Of a stretch of DNA of 64,000 nucleotides, positions 26,079 to 59,579 are shown piece by piece (the first letter of the stretch is position 1; the number at the start of each line of letters is the position of its first letter). The stretch comes from Anolis carolinensis (lineage: Eukaryota). A program made the position numbers and the translations under genes. A model generated the notes under the pieces. The model made no database searches and was not told the DNA's origin. It saw nothing but the letters and a program-made list of their open reading frames with translations. The stretch spans positions 30,976,782 to 31,040,781 of the forward strand of contig NC_085842.1 of the NCBI RefSeq assembly GCF_035594765.1, written 5' to 3'.

Positions 26079-26335
26079 ATCTACACTGTAGAAGTAATGT
26101 AGTTTGATTGCCATGGATCAATGCTATGGCGTCCTGGGAGTTGTAGTTTTACAAGGTCTTGAGCCTTCTCTGCCATTGTGCTACTGCTTCATCAGATCAC
26201 AAAGCATAACATTGAGCCAGGACGGATAAAGTGATGTCAAAGTGCATTAGCTCTACAAGTGTTGATGTGCGCGCTTTCCCTGTTAACAAATAGGATGTTG
26301 ACATCAGAGACCTCATGGCAGGTTACAGTTAAAGA

Positions 26336-26521
26336 AGGCATAGGCAAACTTGGGCCCTCCAGGTGTCTTGGACTTCAACTCCCAGAATTCCTAACAGCCT
26401 CAGGCCTCTTCTTTTTCCCCCTCAGCGCGGCCGAGAGGGGAAAGGAAGGGGCCTGAGGCTGTTAGGAATTCTGGGAGTTGAAGTCCAAGACACCTGGAGA
26501 GCCCAAGTTTGCCCAGGCCTG
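26336..26521. mobile_element. Palindromic hAT MITE
   Basis: Same family as 181-366. Confidence 0.8.
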
Positions 26522-26527
26522 TTCTAC

Positions 26528-26930
26528 CTTAGGCAAGCCCTTCTGAAGATCCACGGCCTCCGCCAAAGGCCCCTTGCAGACAATATCCCGGCAGCAGAGC
26601 AGGCAGAATAATAATGGCGCCGGTTTTTCCCTCAGGCGGAGAGAGAGAAGGGCGCTGGCTGGCTGCTTTTGCCGTCGCTCAAGTTGGGCAGGGAGGCGAG
26701 GAACAGAGAAGTGCGCTGGTTGGTTGCCTCGTCTGCCGTTCGGTGCGTCAGCCCGCCTCTTCGAGGCTACTTCCGCCTGGGAAGGCGGGCAGGAGAGCTC
26801 TGGCTGGCTGCTTCTGCTGTGGCTTAAGTTGCTCAGCCCGCCTCCGGGGGGGGGGGTTAAGAAGTGGAGCAGCTGGTGGATTGGCTGCTTCCGCAGTTAC
26901 TCTATTTTTCAGCCCGCCTACTGACAAGCA
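26528..26930 (-). promoter_or_regulatory. CpG-rich island, probable promoter / non-coding first exon (minus strand tentative)
   Basis: High GC and CpG content; ETS motif ACTTCCG near 26769; minus-strand donor AAG|GTAGAA at 26527. Confidence 0.55.
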
Positions 26931-33209: not shown

Positions 33210-35347
33210 GTAAGTTACTGTTTCTGTTTAATAAGATAAGAGGATTGAGATTGTGCCTAGAATAAATGTTTCTGCCAAGAGCTGGAGGAGAATTGAAAAC
33301 GATACAGGTTTTATTGTCTGAGGAGTGGGAAACTGGTCTCTGGACTGCCTTAGTACCCAATCCTTTCTTACATTCCCAGGACAACCTGAAAGCATTCTTA
33401 CGTCCCGATTTTTCTTAAAAAATAGATGAAAGTGATAAAAAATACAGCAGATTAGGTTGCTTGTCCTTCATTACCCCTTGATTTTTTTAATTGATAAGGA
33501 ATGGTAATTTTTTATTGAACAATGAAACAAGAAGTAATGTCACATCTGCTTTGAGTCACTTGGCACAAGGTAGTATTCTCTGATAAGGGATTGTACAGGG
33601 TCCAAAACTGCCTGCCAGCCCAAGTGCCATCTTAATCCTTGTTCTTCATGGTTTAGTTAGTGACATACTATACATACTTGTGTGTAAATCGATCTCACAT
33701 GTTTGGTGAGGACAGGTTTGGGGCCCAACATTAAGGATTGTGATATGACTTGTGAAAAGGCCTGTGGATCTGTATGTGATGCTTCTTTTCAGATACTGAG
33801 TGCTCTGCATAGCACATGTGTCTGTTCACAGCCAGTTCATCATCATGATATATCATGCAGCGATTCACAGTAGTTATCCCCTTTATTGAAGGAATGTACA
33901 CTCAGTATGTATTTCTTTCTCTTAGATGGAGGATGGAAAGCCAAATGGAGCAAGACCTGGTTTAAGGCTGTGATTTTTTCAGTCATACTTGTTACTAGCA
34001 ATGTTGTTACTGCCTTCATTAGTGAGTTCTCAATGTCTTTCTTATCTATTTTATTTGATTACCACCTGTCTGTCATAGTTCTGTTTCAGAATTCATTGGT
34101 TTCCAGTTTTTCTTCAATACTAAGACACCATTGATTGTAACATGCAAACTAATTTCAGTACCACCAAGAGGGGAAAAAAACTACCGTATTTTTCGCTTTA
34201 TAAGACGCACCTGATGATAAGACGCACCTAGTTTTCAGAGGAGGAAAATGGGGAAAAATAATTTGAACTAAAAGATGACCCACACGTTCTTGTGAAATGC
34301 CAATTATGCTTGAAATTTTTCTCTGAGTGATACGACTATCATCCTGAGTCAATCTGTCAAACTTTTGCTTGTGAAACTCGGTGGTTGTTGTCATAGGACG
34401 TCCAACTCTTTGTTTGTCACTTTCCAAATTGACCGGCGAGCGGGGGTCCCGGATCATGGCCTCCAGCTTCCTCCGCCGGCCCGGGAGCAGCGCGTCTTCC
34501 CCGCTGGCGGGCGCTTGCGGGGCGGGTATTTTCCCCGGCGAGGCCGCCGGCTGCTGTGGGGGCCGGTAGTTCATGCCTAGCCCTTCCTCCTCCTCCTCCT
34601 CCTCCTCCGCTGGCTTCCTGGCGATGGCGGCTGCTCGGCTTCGAGGGGGGAGGAGGAGAAGGCAGGCGCAGCGGCGGTGGCAACAAGCGAGGGGCGCCTC
34701 CCGCCGCCAGCGCCTCCTGCGGGGCCTACTCCGAGAAATCCAGGCGGCGGCTCAGTCCCGGCCTGGACCGGCCAGGCCTCTTCTGCCTCGGAGGGAAGGG
34801 AGGGAGGCGAAGGCGAGAGAGAGCAAGAGAGGCCCGCCCTCAGCAGCCGGGGGGAGGAGGAGGAGGAGGACGGCCCCTTCCCCCCGCTCGCTCTCCGTTC
34901 CCAGAGCCAAGGAAATGGGCTCAATGGCGCCTCCCAAACTCTCCTCTTCTTCTTAGGCGGGAAAACAAGTCGCGTCCCTTCCCCTCAAATCCCTGAGGGG
35001 ATTTGGAGCAGCTTACAACAGTGTAAATACTCATCCATATTGAGAAACAGTACTGGTTGCATCCCCTCCCCGCCCCACCCTTCCAAGGGAAAAGTCATCG
35101 GCAGCAGCACGTGAGGTCATATTGCGTTTATAAGACGCACTGACTTTTTCCCTCTATTTTGGGGGGGGGGGGGGGAAAGTGTGTCTTATAAAGCGAAAAA
35201 TACGGTATATACATGCAGTCCCTAAGTTACAAACAACATAGGTTCTGTTGGTTCTTTCTTAAGTTGAATTGTATGTACGTCAGAACAGGAACATTTTCTA
35301 GCTGTATTCCCCCCCCCCCCCTCTCAATCTCCCCCTTTCCTCCCCCC

Positions 35348-38400: not shown

Positions 38401-41054
38401 TAACAGCTATTTTACTACACATGAACCATTGTTTTCTATGCAAAATCAAATTCAAATGAATTTTGCAAAGTATAAACCCCCAATTAAAGTATGTTTTACA
38501 CAGAAAATATTATTTTCACCACATCATCATACCCATTCACTTTTCATTTCTATTGCTGTTCACAACACACAGTCTGGCTATAAAATTTGCCTACAGACCC
38601 TTTACTCCCTGCATTTGAAGAAGTAGACTTAGTCTAAAAAAAGCTCATGCTGCCAGTATCCTTCACTCTGACTCTAATATGCAACAAGATAATTTTGCTT
38701 GTTGTGATTCAGGATTAACATGGGTATGTCTTTTCCTGAAAGTGTTTAAATGTTTTTCAATCCCTAGGCAACACCTGTTACAATCCTCTCTTCTACATTA
38801 AAAGTATGAAATTGCTCTTCAGTTTTCACCCTAGTTTCCTTCCTTTGTAACCCACATTTCTATAACATGGTGGTCAGTGTTTATGATGCTTGACAATGTG
38901 AGACACATTTTCTTTAATTACAGGACTTCATAATGCAAGCTAAGGGACCAACTGAGTATTGGATTGGCTTGAAGAGAAAGAAAGGGCAGCACTGGGAATG
39001 GGTAAATGGAACTCTCTTCAATGACTGGTAAGGTTTTCCAAGTTGCTAAAATGGAGAGGTATCAGTCAAAAACCAAACAACAACCAAAATATTATAAAGT
39101 CACATAACTAGAAAATATGAGGGTTCAATTTTGCAATTACAAAAATGATGACACACAAAATTTCAGGATTCAAAACAAAAAGAACACAAAAATGGCAGCA
39201 GAACAGAAAATCACAAACATTGTGACATAATTGAGTCAGATAAAGAAGAAAACAATATTTATTAGCTCGGATTATGGTGAATCTGAACTTTCTAAAAGAT
39301 ACAAACTATTTGGTGTTCCATGGTCTTTAGTCAGGGAGCCCCCGGTGGTGCAGCATGTTATAGCGCTGAGCTGCTGAACTTGTGGACCAAAAGGTCGCAG
39401 GTTCGAATCTGGGGAGTGGAGTGAGTGCCCGCTCTGCCAACTTCTGCCAACCTAGCAGTTCAAAAACAGGCAAATGTGAGTAGATCAATGGGTACCACTT
39501 CAGCGGGAAGGTAATAGCACGCCATGCAGTCATGCCGGCCATATTACCTTGGAGGTGTCTACGGACAACACCGGCTCTTCGGCTTGGAAATGGAGATGAG
39601 CACCAACCCCCAGAGTCAGTTACAACTGGACTTAATGTCAGGAGAAAACCTTTACCTTTACCCTTAGTCTTGAGTCAATGAGTAGCATTTGCTTCTGACC
39701 CCAGGCTCATTCTGGTTTGAGGCAGTTTAAAAAGGGATTTCTCCCATCAATTGCAAGAGGAACTTCTTTTTAAAAATTCTAGTTGTGCAGAAGAAATTTT
39801 ACTCTATTTGATTCCTCATCAATTTTGGCTTGGCCTTTTCCAGTATAGTGTATCATATACATGGAGAATTTTGGGTTTGTTGTGTTTTCTCTTTCTGTAA
39901 TTTTGTGTCCTTCTGGCATTTTTACAAGATTTTGATATTTTGTGCCCTTGAATTTGTGTATCATGGTTTTGTAATAACATAATTTAACTATCATGCTTTG
40001 TAATTGTATGATTTTATTGTGTGGTTGTTGTTTGGTAAGACAGTCCTTCTTTAGATTTTAGGTTTCAGAAGATCTTGAGACAATGTTAAAAGGTTTCATT
40101 TTAACATTTCCCCTCCTTAAAACAAAAACGTTTGTTTGAAAAGTGGTCTGTTTCTACAGTTAGGACATTACATATTTTATGTATTTAGTCTTTCAGGGCC
40201 ATCCCTCACAAAGCAGCATACATAAAAGAAAAAAAGTCACAGATACAGTAGGCAGATAAATCTAGATCCAGGTGGCCAAAGCTATTTTTGTGAATCTATG
40301 TGGCAAATCCCAGAATTCCATGGGAAGTTTCCATTGCAGTTAAAGTGGATTCAGAGTGCTATAACTTTGTAGTGTGGATGGCCACAAGATACTGGGACAA
40401 TAAATGGAAGAAGCAAGGAACTTTGCAAGGGAAAAGAAACATGATTTTGCTGACCTCCTGCTAATAACTTATTTTTTATCCTCCATTTTCCTGATTGGTA
40501 AAATAAGAAAATTAATTGGTTGCTTTCACATATATCTTTATTTATTTCAAGCAAATTTAGAGTGGTCTGCCAGAATTTCTGATCTGTAATGCAAGGTAGA
40601 TTCACATCTATCCAAGTGCATGTTACATGGACTGCAGTCAATAACTTCTGTTTATAGACTTCACCATTCTCATTTAAAAAATTAATAGATCCTGCATGTT
40701 CACTTTACCCTGTTAAAAGATATACAGGGTGTTTCATGGACTCAAGTGTAGAATTTGTCGAGTGCTTTGAGTGTGTATTCCTGGATGATCCTTTCTGTTT
40801 CTTTCAACTCTGATCTTTCTATGTTTTATGATTCTATGAGGGGTTTTTTTTCTTTGACACAACATAAATAAGGAAACTACTGGTAGTGTGATGTAGGTCA
40901 CGACATAGGGACTTCATTTCTGTTGTCCTCTCATTGCAGGCTCGACATTGGAGCTGATGGACCCTGTGCTTACCTGAATGATGAGAAGGCCAGTTCAACA
41001 TTATGCGGGACAAGACGAAATTGGATATGTGGCATGTCTGCTCGCACAGCCTAA
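33020..41054 (+). CDS. Type II transmembrane C-type lectin-like receptor (CLEC2/CD69/avian BLEC-like), 5 coding exons, 230 aa
   Basis: Exons 33020-33209 (cytoplasmic), 33926-34021 (TM), 37899-38086, 38924-39027 and 40940-41054. Intron phases 1,1,0,2 are typical of NK-complex lectins. All six CTLD cysteines are present, plus CPxGW..KCYYFS, YWIGL and CAYL...C..R.WIC motifs. An in-frame TAA at 32954 lies upstream of the ATG. Confidence 0.92.
33926..34021 (+). CDS. C-type lectin coding exon 2, transmembrane segment
   Basis: GGWKAKWSKTWFKAVIFSVILVTSNVVTAFI: basic residues then a hydrophobic stretch; phase 1-1. Confidence 0.85.
34275..34418 (-). mobile_element. Mariner transposase HTH fragment
   Basis: DKQRVGRPMT....K.DRL.QDDSRITQRKISSIIGISQERVGH matches the GRP linker and second HTH. 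Confidence 0.8.
34419..34990 (-). pseudogene. ROCK2: Transduplicated fragment of the ROCK2 5' region and coding exon 1
   Basis: MNYRPPQQPAASPGKIP...GRRRKLEAMIRDPRSPVNLES resembles the recalled ROCK2 N-terminus (MSRPPPTGKMP...[22 protein letters not shown]), preceded by a GC/CpG-rich leader. No further ROCK2 exons are in the window. Confidence 0.85.
35213..35720. mobile_element. Tigger-like MITE with an internal (CT)n(AT)n microsatellite
   Basis: GCAGTCCCTAAGTTAC terminus; sister copy at 44712-45108. Confidence 0.65.
36561..36887 (+). mobile_element. Sauria SINE
   Basis: Full-length tRNA-like head and ACCTTT tail. Confidence 0.85.
37899..38086 (+). CDS. C-type lectin coding exon 3, stalk and start of CTLD
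   Basis: LSCPSGWVGYEGKCYYFSESETNWNLSQSNCSASGASLVTIENQKEM. Confidence 0.95.
38924..39027 (+). CDS. C-type lectin coding exon 4
   Basis: DFIMQAKGPTEYWIGLKRKKGQHWEWVNGTLFNDW. Confidence 0.95.
39334..39663 (+). mobile_element. Sauria SINE
   Basis: Full-length copy with ACCTTTACC tail. Confidence 0.85.
40940..41054 (+). CDS. C-type lectin coding exon 5 (last)
   Basis: LDIGADGPCAYLNDEKASSTLCGTRRNWICGMSARTA, then TAA. Confidence 0.95.
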
Positions 41055-41506
41055 GCAAAGTTTGAAAGCTTCCCAACACAAATGATTTGATAATTGTATG
41101 CTGTACATGGGTTATCTGTTTATTCAAAAGGTCCAGACCAGAACTGGGGAGCAACAGGTTATCGGCTACATTTGGATGACCACAAGTTGCCCACTTTGCT
41201 TGGTTCAGCTGCTGGATTTGTCCGTGGAGAAAAATCAAACACAATGGAATCCTCACTGCCAGTCTTACCCATTGAATATTTCAATTTGCAATTCAATGGT
41301 TATCCCATTAGAATATTCTAATGGGCAGACAAACTATTTCCACACCCCAGTGCAACTCCCAGCATTTCTTGGCACTGCCACCAGCTAAGACTGATGGGGA
41401 GTATAGTTCAACAGTTTCTAATAGGCCTCTCTTGCACCAAAAATGTAGCCTTGTGACTTTAGTATCCCAGAGGGAGTACTCGAGGACTCCCTCTGGGATA
41501 CTAAAG

Positions 41507-50574: not shown

Positions 50575-51000
50575 ACACAGCCAATACATTCCCCTTCTTA
50601 AAGTCTCCCAGCAGGTGGGGGCGGGACATCCTGCAGCTGAAATCGGAAGAGAGAGAAAGAAAAGACTTCCGGTGTCTCTACTGCTCCGTCTCTCCGCTTC
50701 TGCTTCTTCATCGCTGCAGCCGTTCTCCTTCTCGCATCTCTGTTGGATTCTGGGCCTTTCAGCCTCCCTTAACCAAAGGCAAACCAGAGGCCTGAATCCT
50801 CTCAGCGCCTTGCCTTGTTCCTGCGGAGGAGGGAGCCCAGCATGGAGGAGGGAGATCCCGGGGAGAGAAGGAAGCTGTTGAGGGGGATCCAGGCTCGGCG
50901 AAGCAAAGGCCCCTCTGCGCATGCGCATGTCCCGTCTGAAGCAGGCCAAGGGCCCTGGAGAGAAGCCGCCCTCGACGAGAGAAGGAGCGGAGTAAGTGCC
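50575..51000 (+). promoter_or_regulatory. CpG-island promoter and first exon
   Basis: CCAAT at 50581, GC box at 50617, ETS ACTTCCGGT at 50665, NRF1 TGCGCATGCGCA at 50916, donor GGA|GTAAGT at 50992. Confidence 0.75.
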
Positions 51001-51056
51001 CCAAAGACAGGAGGGCTGCGTGGTCAGCATACAAGGGGGAAGGGGCTCTTTCAGCT

Positions 51057-51233
51057 CAGGCCTAGGCAAACTTGGGCTCTCCAGGGGTTTTGGACTCCAA
51101 CTCCCACCATTCCTCACAGCCTCAGGCCCCTTCCTTTTCCCCCTCAGCCGCTTAAGGAAAGGGCCTGAGGCTGTGAGGAATGGTGGGAGTTGGAGTCCAA
51201 AACCCCTGGAGGGCCCAAGTCTGCCCATGCCTG
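51057..51233. mobile_element. Palindromic hAT MITE
   Basis: Same family as 181-366. Confidence 0.8.
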
Positions 51234-51689
51234 GACTATACCTTCCATGATGCCAGACCTGCAGCTGATCAGGGCTTCTGGGAGCTAGAATCCAAAACTT
51301 TATGGTTGCCCAACTATAATTGTTTTGCATAGCGGTCAGTGCCCTTCCACCCCTTTTGATTCGCAAACTACTACTCCAGGTGTTTTAGATTTCAGCTCCC
51401 AGAAGTTGTGGAAGTTGAAGTCCTAAACATCTGGAGGTGCAGTTTGAGAAACTATGACCTAAGATAACACTTTCCTCTTTATCCTGATCATTTAGCTAAC
51501 ATGTGTCAAACTGAAGACCCATGTGCCGAATCTGAACCGCCATGTCATTTTATGAGACCCTCCAGATGCTGGACTATTTGTCATCATTAGACATCATAAC
51601 TAGAGCTGATGGGAGTTGGGATGCATAACTTTTGATTTTCCACCATGCGGACCGGGGAGAGTGGGAATTGCGAGCCAACAGCACGCTGA

Positions 51690-52255
51690 GGTTGGGCAAA
51701 GATACAGGGAAGTCATGCAACCTCTCTGTTCTGCCCTGGTCAGCCCACACCTGAAATACTGTGTCCAATTCTAGGCACTGCAGTTTAAGGGAGATGTTGA
51801 CAAGTTGGAAAGTGTCCAGAGGAGGGTGACTAAAATGATCAAGGGTCTGGCGAACAAGCCCTATGATGAGCGGCTTAAAGAGCTGGGCATTTTTAGGCTG
51901 CAGAAGAGAAGGCTGAGAGAGACATGATGAGGCCATGTATAAATACGTGAGGGGAAGTCATAGGGAGGAGGGAGAAAGCTTGTGTTCTGCTGCCCTGGAG
52001 ACTAGGACATGGAACAATGGCTTCAAACTACAGGAAAGGAGATTCTACCTGATTATTAGGAAGAACTTCCTCACTATGAGAACAGTTCAGCAGTAGAACT
52101 CTACCCCGGAGTGTGGCGGAGGCTCCTTCTTTGGAGGCATTGAAACAGAAACTGGGTGGCCATCTGTCGGGGGTGCTTTCAATGCGATTTTCCTGCTTCC
52201 TGGCAGGGGTTGGACTGGATGACCCCTGAGGTCTCTTCCAACTCTATGATTCTGT
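51690..52255 (+). mobile_element. CR1 LINE 3' fragment
   Basis: Decayed RT C-terminus and CTATGATTCT tail. Confidence 0.8.
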
Positions 52256-53009
52256 GAAAGGTTATAGGACATTTTAAAGTCAGGCATCACATCCACAAGC
52301 CTTATGTCTAAATTCAAACCTCTGACTGAGCAGAATAAACTGCAGCACCTAGGAATCTCTTTGCTCTGTAGACTAGCCTTTACTTAGTTGATCCCTCGGC
52401 TTTTTATTAAATTGGACTATAAATTACTTTTGTTTGACTCGGGTTTGTTTACTGTGATGTCCTCTTCTTCTACCCTCGGCTTTGACCTGGACTGTTTCAA
52501 CTAATCAGGCCAGTAATGTTATCTACTACCTTCTTCGAAATACTTGGCTTGCAGGGGGAATTTTACCAACACAATCCTTCCATGTGTTCCTCTGTTTACT
52601 CCTCATGCTCACAAGAACCTTGAGCCGAGTCTCAAGGCCCTTCTGAGAAACAATATCTTAGGTTAAAGAAAAGAAAAAACATTTTTTGCTTGCCTGCAGG
52701 CTGTTGCTACCTATGGCTGCCTCAAAAAGTACTGGCAACTGCAAAGAGTAAAAAGGGGGATCACAAGCCCTCTTCTCTACGGCACCCCAACATATGGGAA
52801 AAACCAGCTGAGAAGCATGTTGTGGCCTAGCTAGTTCCTGTTCCCTAGTGGTAACTGTATGGGAGGAATAGAGGTGTCCTAACTAGCAGAGGGTGCACTT
52901 CAGTCACTGATTTCTAGAAAGAAGGAATAACGGGAGCATAGGGAAGGGAAAGCATAATAGCCAGGCACTCCTCCAAATTGGAGTTTGGGGACCAGGGTGC
53001 ATTTACACT

Positions 53010-53660
53010 GTAAGATTAGGGTTGGAAAAGACCCCAAGGGCTATCAAGTTCAACCCCATACTGCCAGGCAGGAAAACACAATCAAAGCACAGGTGGCCAT
53101 CCACCCTCTGCTAAAAAATCTCCAGAGGCAGGGACTCCACCACACTCCCAGGCAGCATATTCTACTGCTGTACATCTCACACTGTCAGGAAGTTCTTCCT
53201 TATGTTTAGGTGGCATCTCTTTTCTGCAGTCTTCATCCATTACTCCCTGTCCTAGTTTCCAGAGCAGCAGAAAGCAAGCTTTCTCCATCATCAGATATTT
53301 AAACATGGCCATCATGTTATTTCTCAGGTTTCTTTTCTTCAAGCTAAACATACCCTTCAGCCATTCTTCATAGGGCTTGGCTTCGAGACAACATTGGGTA
53401 TACTTCTCCGGACCCTTACCTCTTGTCAATATCCTTCTTGAATTGTGGCGCCCAGACTGGACACAGTATTATTCCAGATGAGGTCGGATCAAAGCAGAAT
53501 AGAGTGAGACTATGACTTCCTTCTATCTCAGCACTGTGGTCCTATTGATGCAGCCTATGATCGCATCGGCTTCTTTAGCTGCCACATCACATTGTTGACT
53601 AATGTTCAGCTTGTGGTCGGCTAAGATTCCTAGATCCTTTTCATGTGGACTGTTTTCAAG
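53010..53660 (-). mobile_element. CR1 LINE 3' fragment
   Basis: KPYEEWLK.MFSLKKR.LR motif. Confidence 0.75.
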
Positions 53661-54574
53661 CCAGTTTGACATTACTTGAATCACCACAGCCCAATAGTAT
53701 GTTCTCCTGAGAATTGTAGTGTTAGAAGGTCTTTGATTTTCTCTATCAAAGGGTTCTGGTGCCTCACTGAACTACAATTCCCATGATTCCATAGCATCGA
53801 GCCATGATCATTAAAGTGATGTAAACAACATTAATTCTACAATGTAGATGTATCCTAGACCTCCTGTATTTCCTCCTTGGAAGTTGAGGAGGGAGAACCT
53901 TCATTAGAGATGGAAGTAAATTCAACCCTTCCCCCACTTGTAATACAATGCAATTAGGCTTTGTAAAACGAATGAGTTTTCTTGTACACCTGAAGAAAGG
54001 CATTAGAGATCTAGGTCTCCCGCAGCCTTTGGAAACTCCCTCCAAACTCCCTTGGGAAAATGAGTAGGGTTTTTAAATTATTTTTATTATACTTTTAAAA
54101 AAAATGTAAATTGAATTCCAAGAAATTGAAAATAAGAAATTAAAAACACAGGTGCTAAAATAGGCAACAAAAGAATTAAATACAAAGTCAACCCCATAGT
54201 ATTCCCTTTCCATAACTTCCCCCATCCCACCAACTAAACATAACAAATAAACTCTAACCTCCCTTGGGGGAGACTTTTGTCCAGGGTAGCTCCCTCCCCC
54301 CTGGAGGAGACAATCCATGCCAATATAATGTTATAGCAATTCAAGCCATTAAGAGAAGTTTTTTTCTGTCTATCACAAGCATGGCTCCACTGCACTGGAC
54401 TAAAATGCTATTAAAAGCCTAGCATACATGGACTGAGTCAAAGGTAATAAGAATGATTTCTTGCACAGAGTAGAAGGGGCAGGAACCAAGAGAGCAGTTG
54501 AGGCAGATGGAAGGGGAACCCAGGAATATATTTTGAACATCCTTGGTAGAATCTGTTCTTTTGAAGCAATGTTT

Positions 54575-55920
54575 ATAGAAATTTTTGTGTCTTGTCACAG
54601 GCAAAAATGCAGAGGAGTTTGGAGCAGCGATATGCGATCAAGTTTTGCGTCAAACTTGGAAAATCTGGCTCCGAAACGCTGCAGTTGTTGAGGACAGCTT
54701 ATGGGGATGCTGTGTTGTCTTCAGCCCAAGTCTTCAGGTGGCACAAGGCATTCAAGGACGGAAGGGAGAGCGTTGAGGATGAACAGCGTGCTGGGCGGCC
54801 TTCAACTGCTAGAACTGAGGAGAATGTGGCTCGTGTGAAGGCGGTCCTGGATAGGGACCGAAGATTGAATGTGCGGTTAATTGCAGAGGAGGTAGGACTA
54901 CCGAAAACAGATGTCCATCGAATCATTACGGAAGATCTGCGTATGAGAAAAATTTGTGCAAAACTGGTCCCAAAGAATTTGTCAGATGAACAAAACAACC
55001 ATATGTTGATTTCTCATGAACTCTTGGGTCGTGTGACAAGTGAGCCCAACTTACTGCAGCGACTGATAACTGGGGATGAAGCATGGGTTTTTGAGTATGA
55101 TCCCACAGATGAAAAACAAAGTTCAGAGTGGCACACTTCCCAGTCACCTCAATCAAAGACTGAATAAGCAAATCAAGAGTACAATCTATGCTCATCTGCT
55201 TTTATTTATTTATATCATTTCTATCCCGCCTTTCTCACCCGAGGGGACTCAAGGTGGCTTACAGATCTGGCAAGATTCAATGCCAATAAAATAACAATAC
55301 AGTAGAGTCAAAAACATCAAGCAATAAAAACAATTAGGCATTAAAACACATAAAACAATATACAAAAATTAAGACATATAAAGTGCATAAATCCATTCGT
55401 CCAGAAATCCTGCACATAATCCGTGAACCAGGCCATGTCGAAGTCATAAAATTTATTCATTGAATGCTTTTGTGCATAACCAGGTATTTAGCTTCTTTCT
55501 AAAGCCCAGAAGGGATAGAGCCTGCTGGATGTCGCAGGGGAGGGAGTTCACAAGGGAGTTGTTCACAAGGAGACTTTGTCACCCAGGCAGACTGTGTATC
55601 AAGCATTTTACTTACAGGTACTCAAGCTTTTGAGAAACAAGAGTTGTGTGCTTCCACTGTTTAATTGCAAACACATGGTTTGATCAGCATGCCAGTGTGC
55701 TAAGTCACAGATCATTCACTGTGAGGGACTTTTTGCTTCAAAATATTATCACAATACTTCCCCAACCACTGTACAACCCTGTCTTGGCACTGTGCAATTT
55801 CTTGTTTCCCCTGAGCTCCAAACCCACTTCTGTAGATAACATTTTGGTACACTTGGAAACATTCATGCAACTGTGATGAGGGCTTGGAACAACATCTCTA
55901 GTGAAGACTTCTTTCACTGT
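54575..55920 (+). mobile_element. Mariner transposon remnant, split by an L2-type insertion (about 55203-55555)
   Basis: The decayed catalytic half resumes at about 55555 (GVVHKE...QTV.Q.FYLQVL; LPQPLYNPVLALCNFLFP is a degenerate YSPDLAPCDF motif). Confidence 0.85.
54601..55167 (+). CDS. Mariner transposase N-terminal ORF (both HTH motifs, linker, first catalytic Asp); candidate exon of a domesticated or fusion gene
   Basis: MQRSLEQRYAIKFCVKLGKS..ET...VFRWHKAFKDGRESVEDEQRAGRPST...KICAKLVPKNLS...ITGDEAWVFEYDP. Preceded by a splice acceptor ttttgtgtcttgtcacAG. The mariner identity is clear; gene status is inferred. Confidence 0.55.
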   Translation, partial: AKMQRSLEQRYAIKFCVKLGKSGSETLQLLRTAYGDAVLSSAQVFRWHKAFKDGRESVEDEQRAGRPSTARTEENVARVKAVLDRDRRLNVRLIAEEVGLPKTDVHRIITEDLRMRKICAKLVPKNLSDEQNNHMLISHELLGRVTSEPNLLQRLITGDEAWVFEYDPTDEKQSSEWHTSQSPQSKTE

Positions 55921-55944
55921 TACGTTTAAATATTTGTCACGTTG

Positions 55945-56200
55945 AGGAGGGGCAAGCTTGTTTTTTGCTGCTCCAAATGCAAGGACACAGAGCAGTGGAT
56001 TCAAATTGCAGGAAAAGTGTTTCCACCTAAACATTAAGAAGAACTTCCTGACTGTAAGAACTGTTTGGCAGTGGAATATGCTACCTGAGAGCAGAGGAGT
56101 CTCCTCTGGAGGGCTATTTGTTGGGGTTGCTTTGAATGGCAGAATGGGGTTGGACTGTATGGCCCTTGGGATCTCTTTCAACTTATATGATTCTATAATA
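55945..56200 (+). mobile_element. CR1 LINE 3' fragment
   Basis: RTQSSGFKLQEKCFHLNIKKNFLTVR and a GATTCTAT tail. Confidence 0.75.
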
Positions 56201-56659
56201 TGAAGAGTGGCAGGAGCACTGGAATTGCTGTATTCGGATACAAAATGTCTGTTTTGAAGGGGACAGACTGCACCTGCATGTATGTTCAATAAAAACGTTT
56301 TTATTAATTGTCATCACTTCTGAGGTTTCTAAAGCACAAATAGAGGGGAGGAGAACCCCACTTTTAGCAACAGCTGCATGGCCTTGTTAGCCTCTCCACA
56401 TATAGCATGGGGTTTGTCGTGTGCTTTCAAGTAATTTCTGACCAGAGTTGATCATACTATGGATTTTTTTTCTAGCAAAAATTATTTGTAGGTTTGTTTT
56501 TCTCTGAAAATGTGTGACCAGCCAAAGTCACACAAATGGTTTTTGTGGCTGAATGGGGATCTGGATCCTGGTCTTCAAGGTTATGGCCAAGCACTCAAAG
56601 AACTACACCAAACTGGTGTGGCTTTGGTTCCAGCGTGTGTTCAAATTATTATTACTTTT

Positions 56660-58960: not shown

Positions 58961-59049
58961 TGTTAGAAGGCTGAGGGGGGAAAGAAAGGGGCCTGAGGCT
59001 GTGAGGAATGCTGGGAGTTGAAGTCCAAAACGCCTCGAGAGCCCAGCTT

Positions 59050-59579
59050 TCTAGAAGTGGAGCAGGGCCCGCCTCTCACAGTTGCTCCGCCCACTCGGAG
59101 GAACAGGAAGGAGAAAAAAAAGCGCTTCCCGAGCCCCAGGCGCCATTTTTCTACCTACCTTCGCCGAGGAGGGTGCATTGTCTATTGTCCTGCTTCTCCG
59201 TCGCTGAGGCGATTCCATTCCTCTTCCTTCTCACTGTTTTTTGGACTCGGCTTTTAAGATTTCCTTTCTTAAAAAGCCTTAAACTTCCCCGAAGTTGCCT
59301 TCTCCGGCCTGGCGGAGGAACCAGGCCTAGGGCCCTCTCCATCCACAGCGGGAACGGAGTAAGTACGGCCTACATTTCGGGAAGGCCTATATTTCGCTTC
59401 CCGGCTGAACGCTCTGAGCCACGTGGCGAGGGCCAGGCCTGGGCGCGGAACCGGGATGCGCCGCTGGCCCAGGCAGGGATCGCCATCCCGTTTCAGGGCC
59501 GAGGCCTGGACATGGATGTTGGGCTCAAAGCCCTCAGCAGGGAAGGGGGCGGGCCGTCTGAATAACGGACAGCCAGGGG

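What the first reader, a model, noticed from the sequence alone, without database searches (positions are those of the whole stretch)
50575..55290. Candidate host-transposase fusion gene: a CpG-island exon splices in frame onto a mariner DNA-binding domain
Seen: a housekeeping-type promoter (CCAAT, GC box, ETS, NRF1) with a strong-context ATG (AGCATGG, 50842) and exactly 50 codons to a consensus phase-0 donor (GGA|GTAAGT, 50992). No recognisable host coding exons follow. At 54600 a good acceptor opens in phase 0 (GCA AAA ATG CAG) onto an uninterrupted 188-codon mariner ORF. Joined, these give 238 aa: MEEGDPGERRK...DERRSG-AKMQRSLEQRYAIKFCVKLGK...SKTE*. The ORF keeps both HTH motifs and the LVPK linker but only the first Asp of the DD34D triad. 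AATAAA at 55285, inside an L2-type insertion just past the stop, could end the transcript. Established: SETMAR and KRAB-transposase fusions arose by splicing onto transposase DNA-binding domains. Inference: this is a lineage-specific, catalytically dead protein that binds mariner TIRs. The frame match alone has a 1-in-3 chance, so expression data are needed.
Basis: partly seen in the sequence, partly recalled or inferred. Interest (0 to 1): 0.85.

Follow-up and report, generated by a model that had tools for sequence, protein, structure and literature searches.

The report
Domesticated mariner DNA-binding gene in anoles
A dead jumping gene in anole lizards was hooked up to a host promoter by splicing, and natural selection has kept its DNA-binding half intact, so it is now a real lizard gene, though not a fusion with a host protein domain as first proposed.

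Summary
Real gene; the 'fusion' label is mostly wrong. The 50991^54601 junction (GT..AG) is present in RNA-type contigs from two studies and absent from a genome-sized run. RefSeq already predicts the same 238-aa protein in Anolis carolinensis (XP_008122103, auto-named GVQW3). A syntenic orthologue in A. sagrei has the same splice sites and the same truncating frameshift. Between the species, dN/dS is 0.11 over the DNA-binding domain, against 0.76 plus frameshifts in the discarded catalytic part of the same element. Exon 1 is not a host domain: the start codon at 50842 is GTG and out of frame in sagrei, the peptide evolves neutrally, and it has no homologue. The acceptor is the element's own leader sequence with one G-to-A change; the conserved polyA signal (56288) is also the element's own. 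The L2 AATAAA is carolinensis-only and is read through in one run. Best reading: a stand-alone domesticated mariner DNA-binding protein, born by promoter trapping, probably a dimeric binder of the family's inverted repeats; binding and targets are untested. It is not in the Cosby et al. fusion catalogue. The scan noted the CpG boundary on this stretch earlier; no record on other DNA surfaced.

The parts
50581..50672 (+). Promoter motifs: CCAAT (50581), GC box (50618-50625), ETS site (50665-50672); all three conserved in A. sagrei; single-copy in the genome-sized run
   Evidence: table 2 (bin 50679-50877 has one contig's depth in X1)
50709..50991 (+). Exon 1 (at least from 50709; true start not mapped). 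Leader exon; holds NRF1 motif 50916-50927
   Evidence: table 8 (X8 record 24, X3 record 17)
50842..50991 (+). 50-codon in-frame N-terminal extension, specific to A. carolinensis in this form; no domain, no homologue, neutral-like evolution
50992..54600 (+). 3609-nt GT..AG intron; contains CR1-type and other repeats and, at its end, the element's 5' inverted repeat and leader
54425..54456 (+). TA target site (54425-54426) and decayed 5' terminal inverted repeat of the mariner copy (6 mismatches in 30 to related copies)
54580..54600 (+). Splice acceptor made from the element's own leader; AG in both anoles where five related copies have GG
54607..54966 (+). Transposase ATG and bipartite helix-turn-helix DNA-binding domain (aa 1-120); dN/dS 0.11; 6 differences in 125 aa from an intact transposase
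54967..55167 (+). Linker and stub of the catalytic domain (first Asp only), weakly constrained; ends at a 4-nt deletion near 55160 shared with A. sagrei and stop 55165-55167
55168..56329 (+). 3' UTR: decayed rest of the transposase, neutral, several frameshifts; decayed 3' inverted repeat about 56300-56329
55205..55551 (-). L2-type insertion (family assigned from memory), absent in A. sagrei; holds AATAAA at 55285 and 55323
55923..56198 (+). CR1-type fragment (family assigned from memory) inside the element, shared with A. sagrei
56288..56293 (+). AATAAA conserved in A. sagrei (its only one) and present in a related copy: the element's own polyA signal

Best explanation
A stand-alone domesticated mariner DNA-binding gene born by promoter trapping. 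Shown: one whole mariner copy sits 3.4 kb downstream of a housekeeping-type promoter and first exon; one G-to-A change in the element's leader gave an AG acceptor 6 nt before the transposase ATG; a 4-nt deletion cut off the catalytic domain; the element's own polyA signal closes the unit; all this predates the carolinensis-sagrei split, and selection since has kept aa 1-120 only. Inferred: the product dimerises through helix-turn-helix 1 and binds DNA with the old family's specificity, as SETMAR and Mos1 domains do. With no effector domain, it most likely acts by occupying inverted-repeat-derived sites, blocking or recruiting other factors, as a small host regulator. The exon-1 peptide is a tolerated extension: what matters is probably that the first AUG of the mRNA is in frame, as it is in both species though the AUGs differ.
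For: Junction in two studies, none in the DNA-type run; 13 further RNA-type runs hold exon 2. Orthologue with the same splice sites and stop. dN/dS 0.11 for aa 1-120 (Fisher p 8e-7; 0 amino-acid against 7 silent changes in aa 1-60), 0.55 for aa 121-183, 0.76 after the frameshift; 1.00 after the frameshift against related copies. No frameshift between species in 558 nt against five events after the stop (chance about 0.004). CpG at Arg codon position 1 kept 7 of 8 times in the domain, mostly lost outside. Domain 95% identical to an intact transposase. Fold and sequence match Mos1 and the SETMAR domain on its inverted repeat; dimer and DNA contacts of that domain are described in PMC9062482.
Against: No protein-level or binding data. 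Only two species. The number of intact target sites in the genome could not be counted; this copy's own inverted repeats are decayed and no other site lies in the window. PMC9062482 warns that specificity cannot be predicted across families. Basic residues of the clamp loop, which carry the nuclear signal in Mos1 (PMC3158080), are lost or cut here, so nuclear import would need diffusion or another signal.
Confidence: 0.62

Rival explanations
1. Anti-transposon factor: the truncated protein is kept because it blocks this mariner family or relatives, by covering inverted repeats or poisoning transposase dimers, like the truncated P-element repressors. Same anatomy as the best reading, different purpose.
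For: No effector domain; dimerisation and DNA-binding parts unchanged from an intact transposase. Dominant-negative poisoning is the classical fate of mariners and truncated P transposase represses (PMC3687335). Many mariner-like non-autonomous families with no known autonomous partner exist in this genome (PMC3014272). The closest relatives found are in metagenomes, one of them a termite gut.
Against: Selection continued for tens of millions of years after this copy decayed; no active family member in anoles was shown here; the same paper notes truncated P transposase alone does not give full repression.
Confidence: 0.2
2. True host-transposase fusion: exon 1 encodes a functional host peptide, for example the remnant of an older gene or a basic nuclear-import signal, and A. 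sagrei lost most of it.
For: ATG 50842 is the first AUG of the mRNA, in strong context and in frame; both species have an in-frame first AUG (chance about 1 in 9); both leaders have basic residues. With two species the ancestral state cannot be polarised.
Against: No domain or homologue; 9 replacement against 3 silent codons, a 6-nt duplication and a 23-nt indel; exon and promoter divergence (0.146) equals neutral flanks (0.137-0.166). GTG to ATG in a CG context is the commoner direction of change (inference).
Confidence: 0.12
3. Neutral read-through: a non-coding transcript happens to splice into a dead mariner, and the frame survived by chance.
For: No protein evidence; RNA status of the runs is a guess by the tool; one in-frame codon indel and several changes lie in aa 121-186.
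Against: Internal control within the same element: strong constraint ends at the domain boundary, silent sites diverge at the neutral rate (dS 0.22), so this is protein-level selection, not low mutation rate or RNA constraint.
Confidence: 0.04

Closest known systems
Drosophila CG4570, Tc1/mariner DNA-binding-module domestication (PMC13548663)
   Same: Only the N-terminal helix-turn-helix region kept, catalytic domain lost, about 200 aa, dN/dS about 0.12, conserved synteny, expressed.
   Different: Independent origin, in insects, and so old that the element's ends are gone; here the whole parent element, both repeats, the acceptor change and the frameshift are still readable.
SETMAR, KRABINER and the host-transposase fusions of Cosby et al. 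(10.1101/2020.05.07.082677)
   Same: Captured by splicing to an acceptor just upstream of the transposase ORF, derived from the element (2 of their 8 cases also needed one substitution); purifying selection on the transposase part.
   Different: No host domain and no parental coding gene seen. The Anolis entries of their Table S3 carry KRAB, SCAN, SET or zinc fingers, and the mariner-class ones have HTH_Tnp_Tc5 domains; none matches this architecture.
Drosophila montium P-element neogene (Nouaud 1997, 1999; titles seen, details from memory)
   Same: A stationary truncated transposase gene that gained an upstream promoter, leader exon and intron and encodes a DNA-binding, repressor-like product.
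   Different: P element with a THAP domain, not mariner; different phylum.
Human GVQW3 (FLJ37770), the name RefSeq transfers to this protein
   Same: Mariner-derived helix-turn-helix protein (from memory); the name is given to many insect and spider mariner ORFs in the hit lists.
   Different: The name reflects similarity, not orthology: the anole gene is 80% identical in DNA to metagenome copies and still has its repeats, so it is a separate, younger event. Human sequence was not compared.

Membership tests
Host-transposase fusion gene (Cosby et al.) | Contains a transposase domain | tested here: met
   Pfam HTH_48, HTH_32; Mos1 and SETMAR matches
Host-transposase fusion gene (Cosby et al.) | Two or more exons with RNA support for the intron | tested here: met
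   joint 50991-54601 in X3 and X8
Host-transposase fusion gene (Cosby et al.) | Fused in frame to host-derived protein sequence or domain | tested here: not met
   in frame in A. carolinensis, but no domain, no homologue, start codon and frame not conserved
Host-transposase fusion gene (Cosby et al.) | Splice acceptor supplied by the element just upstream of the ORF | tested here: met
   one substitution from related copies
Domesticated Tc1/mariner gene, DNA-binding-module type | Loss of mobility (catalytic domain and intact repeats lost) | tested here: met
   shared frameshift, two of three catalytic Asp gone, repeats decayed though still visible
Domesticated Tc1/mariner gene, DNA-binding-module type | Purifying selection after insertion | tested here: met
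   dN/dS 0.11 against 0.76-1.0 in the same element
Domesticated Tc1/mariner gene, DNA-binding-module type | Orthologous position in more than one species | tested here: met
   A. sagrei, collinear from the lectin gene onward; only two species
Domesticated Tc1/mariner gene, DNA-binding-module type | Expression | tested here: met
   RNA only, tissues unknown
Domesticated Tc1/mariner gene, DNA-binding-module type | Sequence-specific DNA binding and a host function | not testable with these tools
   inferred from unchanged domain and PMC9062482
Mariner (DD34D) family | TA target site, about 30-bp inverted repeats, about 350-aa transposase with DD34D triad | tested here: met
   met by the parent family; the anole protein itself lacks the last two Asp

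The most novel reading that the evidence does not exclude
The gene is a bare mariner DNA-binding protein kept as a standing defence against a family that lives in insects: its domain has stayed 95% identical to an intact transposase while the rest decayed by about 20%, and the closest relatives include a termite gut sample. In addition, two anole lineages reached an in-frame first AUG by different routes, so selection acted on frame rather than sequence and a new N-terminus is arising from leader sequence.
Probability: 0.12. Interest if true: 0.78.

Novelty: new member of a known kind. Interest (0 to 1): 0.52.

Why it matters
It adds an apparently undescribed, anole-restricted domesticated transposase gene that domain-architecture surveys would pass over because it has no host domain. 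Every birth step is still legible at one locus (insertion, one-base acceptor, frameshift, own polyA signal, sharp selection boundary), which is rare. It asks what a transposase DNA-binding domain does with no effector, and A. sagrei is a gene-editable lizard, so the question can be tested.

Tried and rejected
Host coding exons downstream or KRAB, SCAN or zinc-finger exons in the window: none. Exon-1 peptide as a domain: nothing in Pfam, 1.84 billion proteins or the ESM Atlas; no second copy of the promoter in the window. Orthologues or longer fusions in other reptiles: only A. sagrei among the best 120 hits in two searches covering 103-490 aa; this does not exclude unannotated or longer kin. 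Run X19 (another organism, identity coded) shows no mariner or promoter coverage at 85% likeness; inconclusive. Other inverted-repeat sites in the window or the sagrei locus: none better than 11 mismatches in 30. Single-sequence fold was poor; the alignment fold was usable. A tree failed on a script error and was not needed. Literature: no paper on this gene; GVQW3 hits are passing mentions.
Full report
Observation. Exon 1 has ATG 50842 and 150 nt to a donor at 50992; the acceptor ends at 54600; 188 open codons follow, with the transposase ATG at 54607 and the stop at 55165-55167. Two details need correcting: the NRF1 motif lies inside exon 1, and the CpG island is marginal (obs/exp 0.55-0.58).

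The splice is real. Contigs of runs X3 and X8, from different studies, join 50991 to 54601 across a 3609-nt GT..AG intron at depth 79.8 and 39.2, while unique intron sequence has depth 0 to 8. The genome-sized run X1 passes through both splice sites and shows no joint. No other joint into this acceptor or out of this donor was among those listed. Thirteen other RNA-type runs from five studies, counting X3 and X8 among them, hold 95% or more of the exon-2 words; the tool only guesses that they are RNA, and tissues are not given. RefSeq predicts the same 238-aa protein for Anolis carolinensis, XP_008122103, named GVQW3 by similarity.

The element. Related copies in metagenome contigs (L003-L009, about 80% identical) define a 1.3-kb mariner with TA target site and about 30-bp inverted repeats. 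One sample is a gut metagenome of the termite Labiotermes labralis that holds host DNA (PMC7800795); whether the copies are termite DNA was not shown. The anole copy is whole: 54427 to about 56329, split by an L2-type insert (55205-55551) and a CR1-type insert (about 55923-56198). Five related copies have GG where both anoles have the acceptor AG, in a CG context in four of them, so one transition most likely made the acceptor. The AATAAA at 56288 is the element's own, conserved in A. sagrei. Contigs cannot show ends.

The orthologue. A. sagrei XP_060615302 is 92% identical, lies after the same C-type lectin gene, uses the same donor and acceptor and ends at the same 4-nt deletion. The split is put at under 50 million years (PMC9596491). 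The L2 insert is absent in sagrei; the CR1 insert is shared. Neutral distance to the related copies (0.22-0.24) is two to three times the per-lineage distance since the split (about 0.08), so the insertion may be much older than the split, if the founder was close to those copies and allowing for early CpG decay. No other reptile protein was found, within the length limits of those searches.

Selection. Between the species dN/dS is 0.11 for aa 1-120 (6.5 replacement, 16.5 silent; Fisher p 8e-7, 1e-5 with a transition bias of 3), with no replacement in aa 1-60; 0.55-0.8 for the rest of the ORF; and 0.76 with five indels for the transposase remainder after the frameshift. Whole-ORF values by four methods are 0.20-0.35. 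Silent divergence in the domain (0.22) is not below neutral flanks (0.14-0.17). CpGs at the first position of Arg codons are kept 7 of 8 times in the domain; third-position ones mostly decayed. This explains the CpG boundary noted earlier by the scan. The carolinensis domain differs from an intact 351-aa transposase at 6 of 125 positions, none in the recognition helices as aligned.

Exon 1 is a leader, not a host domain. In sagrei the 50842 codon is GTG and lies 121 nt from the donor, out of frame; the sagrei model starts at another AUG, which in carolinensis (50921) is out of frame. In 28 alignable codons there are 9 amino-acid changes and 3 silent codons. The peptide has no match anywhere. 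In A. carolinensis the 238-aa form is still the likely main product, because 50842 is the first AUG and in strong context (inference). That the first AUG is in frame in both species, by different routes, has about a 1 in 9 chance and hints at selection against an overlapping upstream ORF; out-of-frame AUGs would stop 71-173 nt into exon 2. Where the promoter came from is unknown; it is single-copy in X1.

Mechanism. Shown: promoter trapping, truncation, expression, selection on the DNA-binding domain. Inferred: the protein folds into two helix-turn-helix units (pLDDT 80-94; nearest structures Mos1 and SETMAR on its repeat), dimerises and binds repeat-like DNA as SETMAR does (PMC9062482). With no effector it would act by occupancy or by recruiting partners. 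I put the host-regulator reading at 0.62, anti-transposon defence at 0.2, true fusion at 0.12 and neutral read-through at 0.04. Target abundance is unknown: X1 shows extra depth over 54460-54658 and one contig with a 1-nt deletion at 55111, which suggests other relics of the family, but depth is no copy number.

Comparison and verdict. It works like Drosophila CG4570 (PMC13548663) and, by memory, the montium P neogene. It shares the birth route of SETMAR and KRABINER but fails the host-domain test, and no entry in Table S3 of Cosby et al. matches it (I matched by architecture, not by gene id). It is a new member of a known kind: predicted by RefSeq, apparently never described as domesticated. 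A per-column majority of four related copies was used inside a script only to polarise changes. Interest 0.52.

Noticed in passing
window 34155-35000: Strong CpG island whose minus-strand ORF resembles ROCK2 exon 1 (from memory) joined to a piece of a different mariner; earlier scan notes call it a pack-type element inside a lectin intron.
   Followed up: no
window 59050-59365: Second promoter-like CpG island (obs/exp 0.75) with a YY1-like motif and a consensus donor at about 59360; no partner exon identified, no match in the A. sagrei locus fetched.
   Followed up: no
window 26540-26920: Third promoter-like CpG island (obs/exp 0.65). Like the islands at 50600 and 59050 it has the same palindromic repeat right beside it (26330-26520, 51057-51237, 58970-59050).
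   Followed up: no
window 38900-41055: Last exons of a C-type lectin gene on the + strand, 9.5 kb upstream of the promoter, syntenic in A. sagrei.
   Followed up: partly
window 55111 and 54460-54658: In run X1, a contig with a 1-nt deletion at 55111 and about 20-fold extra depth over the element's leader: probably other relic copies of this family in the genome.
   Followed up: no
L003-L009: The nearest relatives of this lizard element are in metagenome contigs, at least one from a termite gut; suggests horizontal transfer between insects and anole ancestors. One copy (L009) has an intact 351-aa ORF.
   Followed up: partly
window 55108-55119: Both anoles have lost basic residues in the clamp-loop stretch that carries the nuclear signal in Mos1, and the frameshift removes a second basic stretch.
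   Followed up: partly
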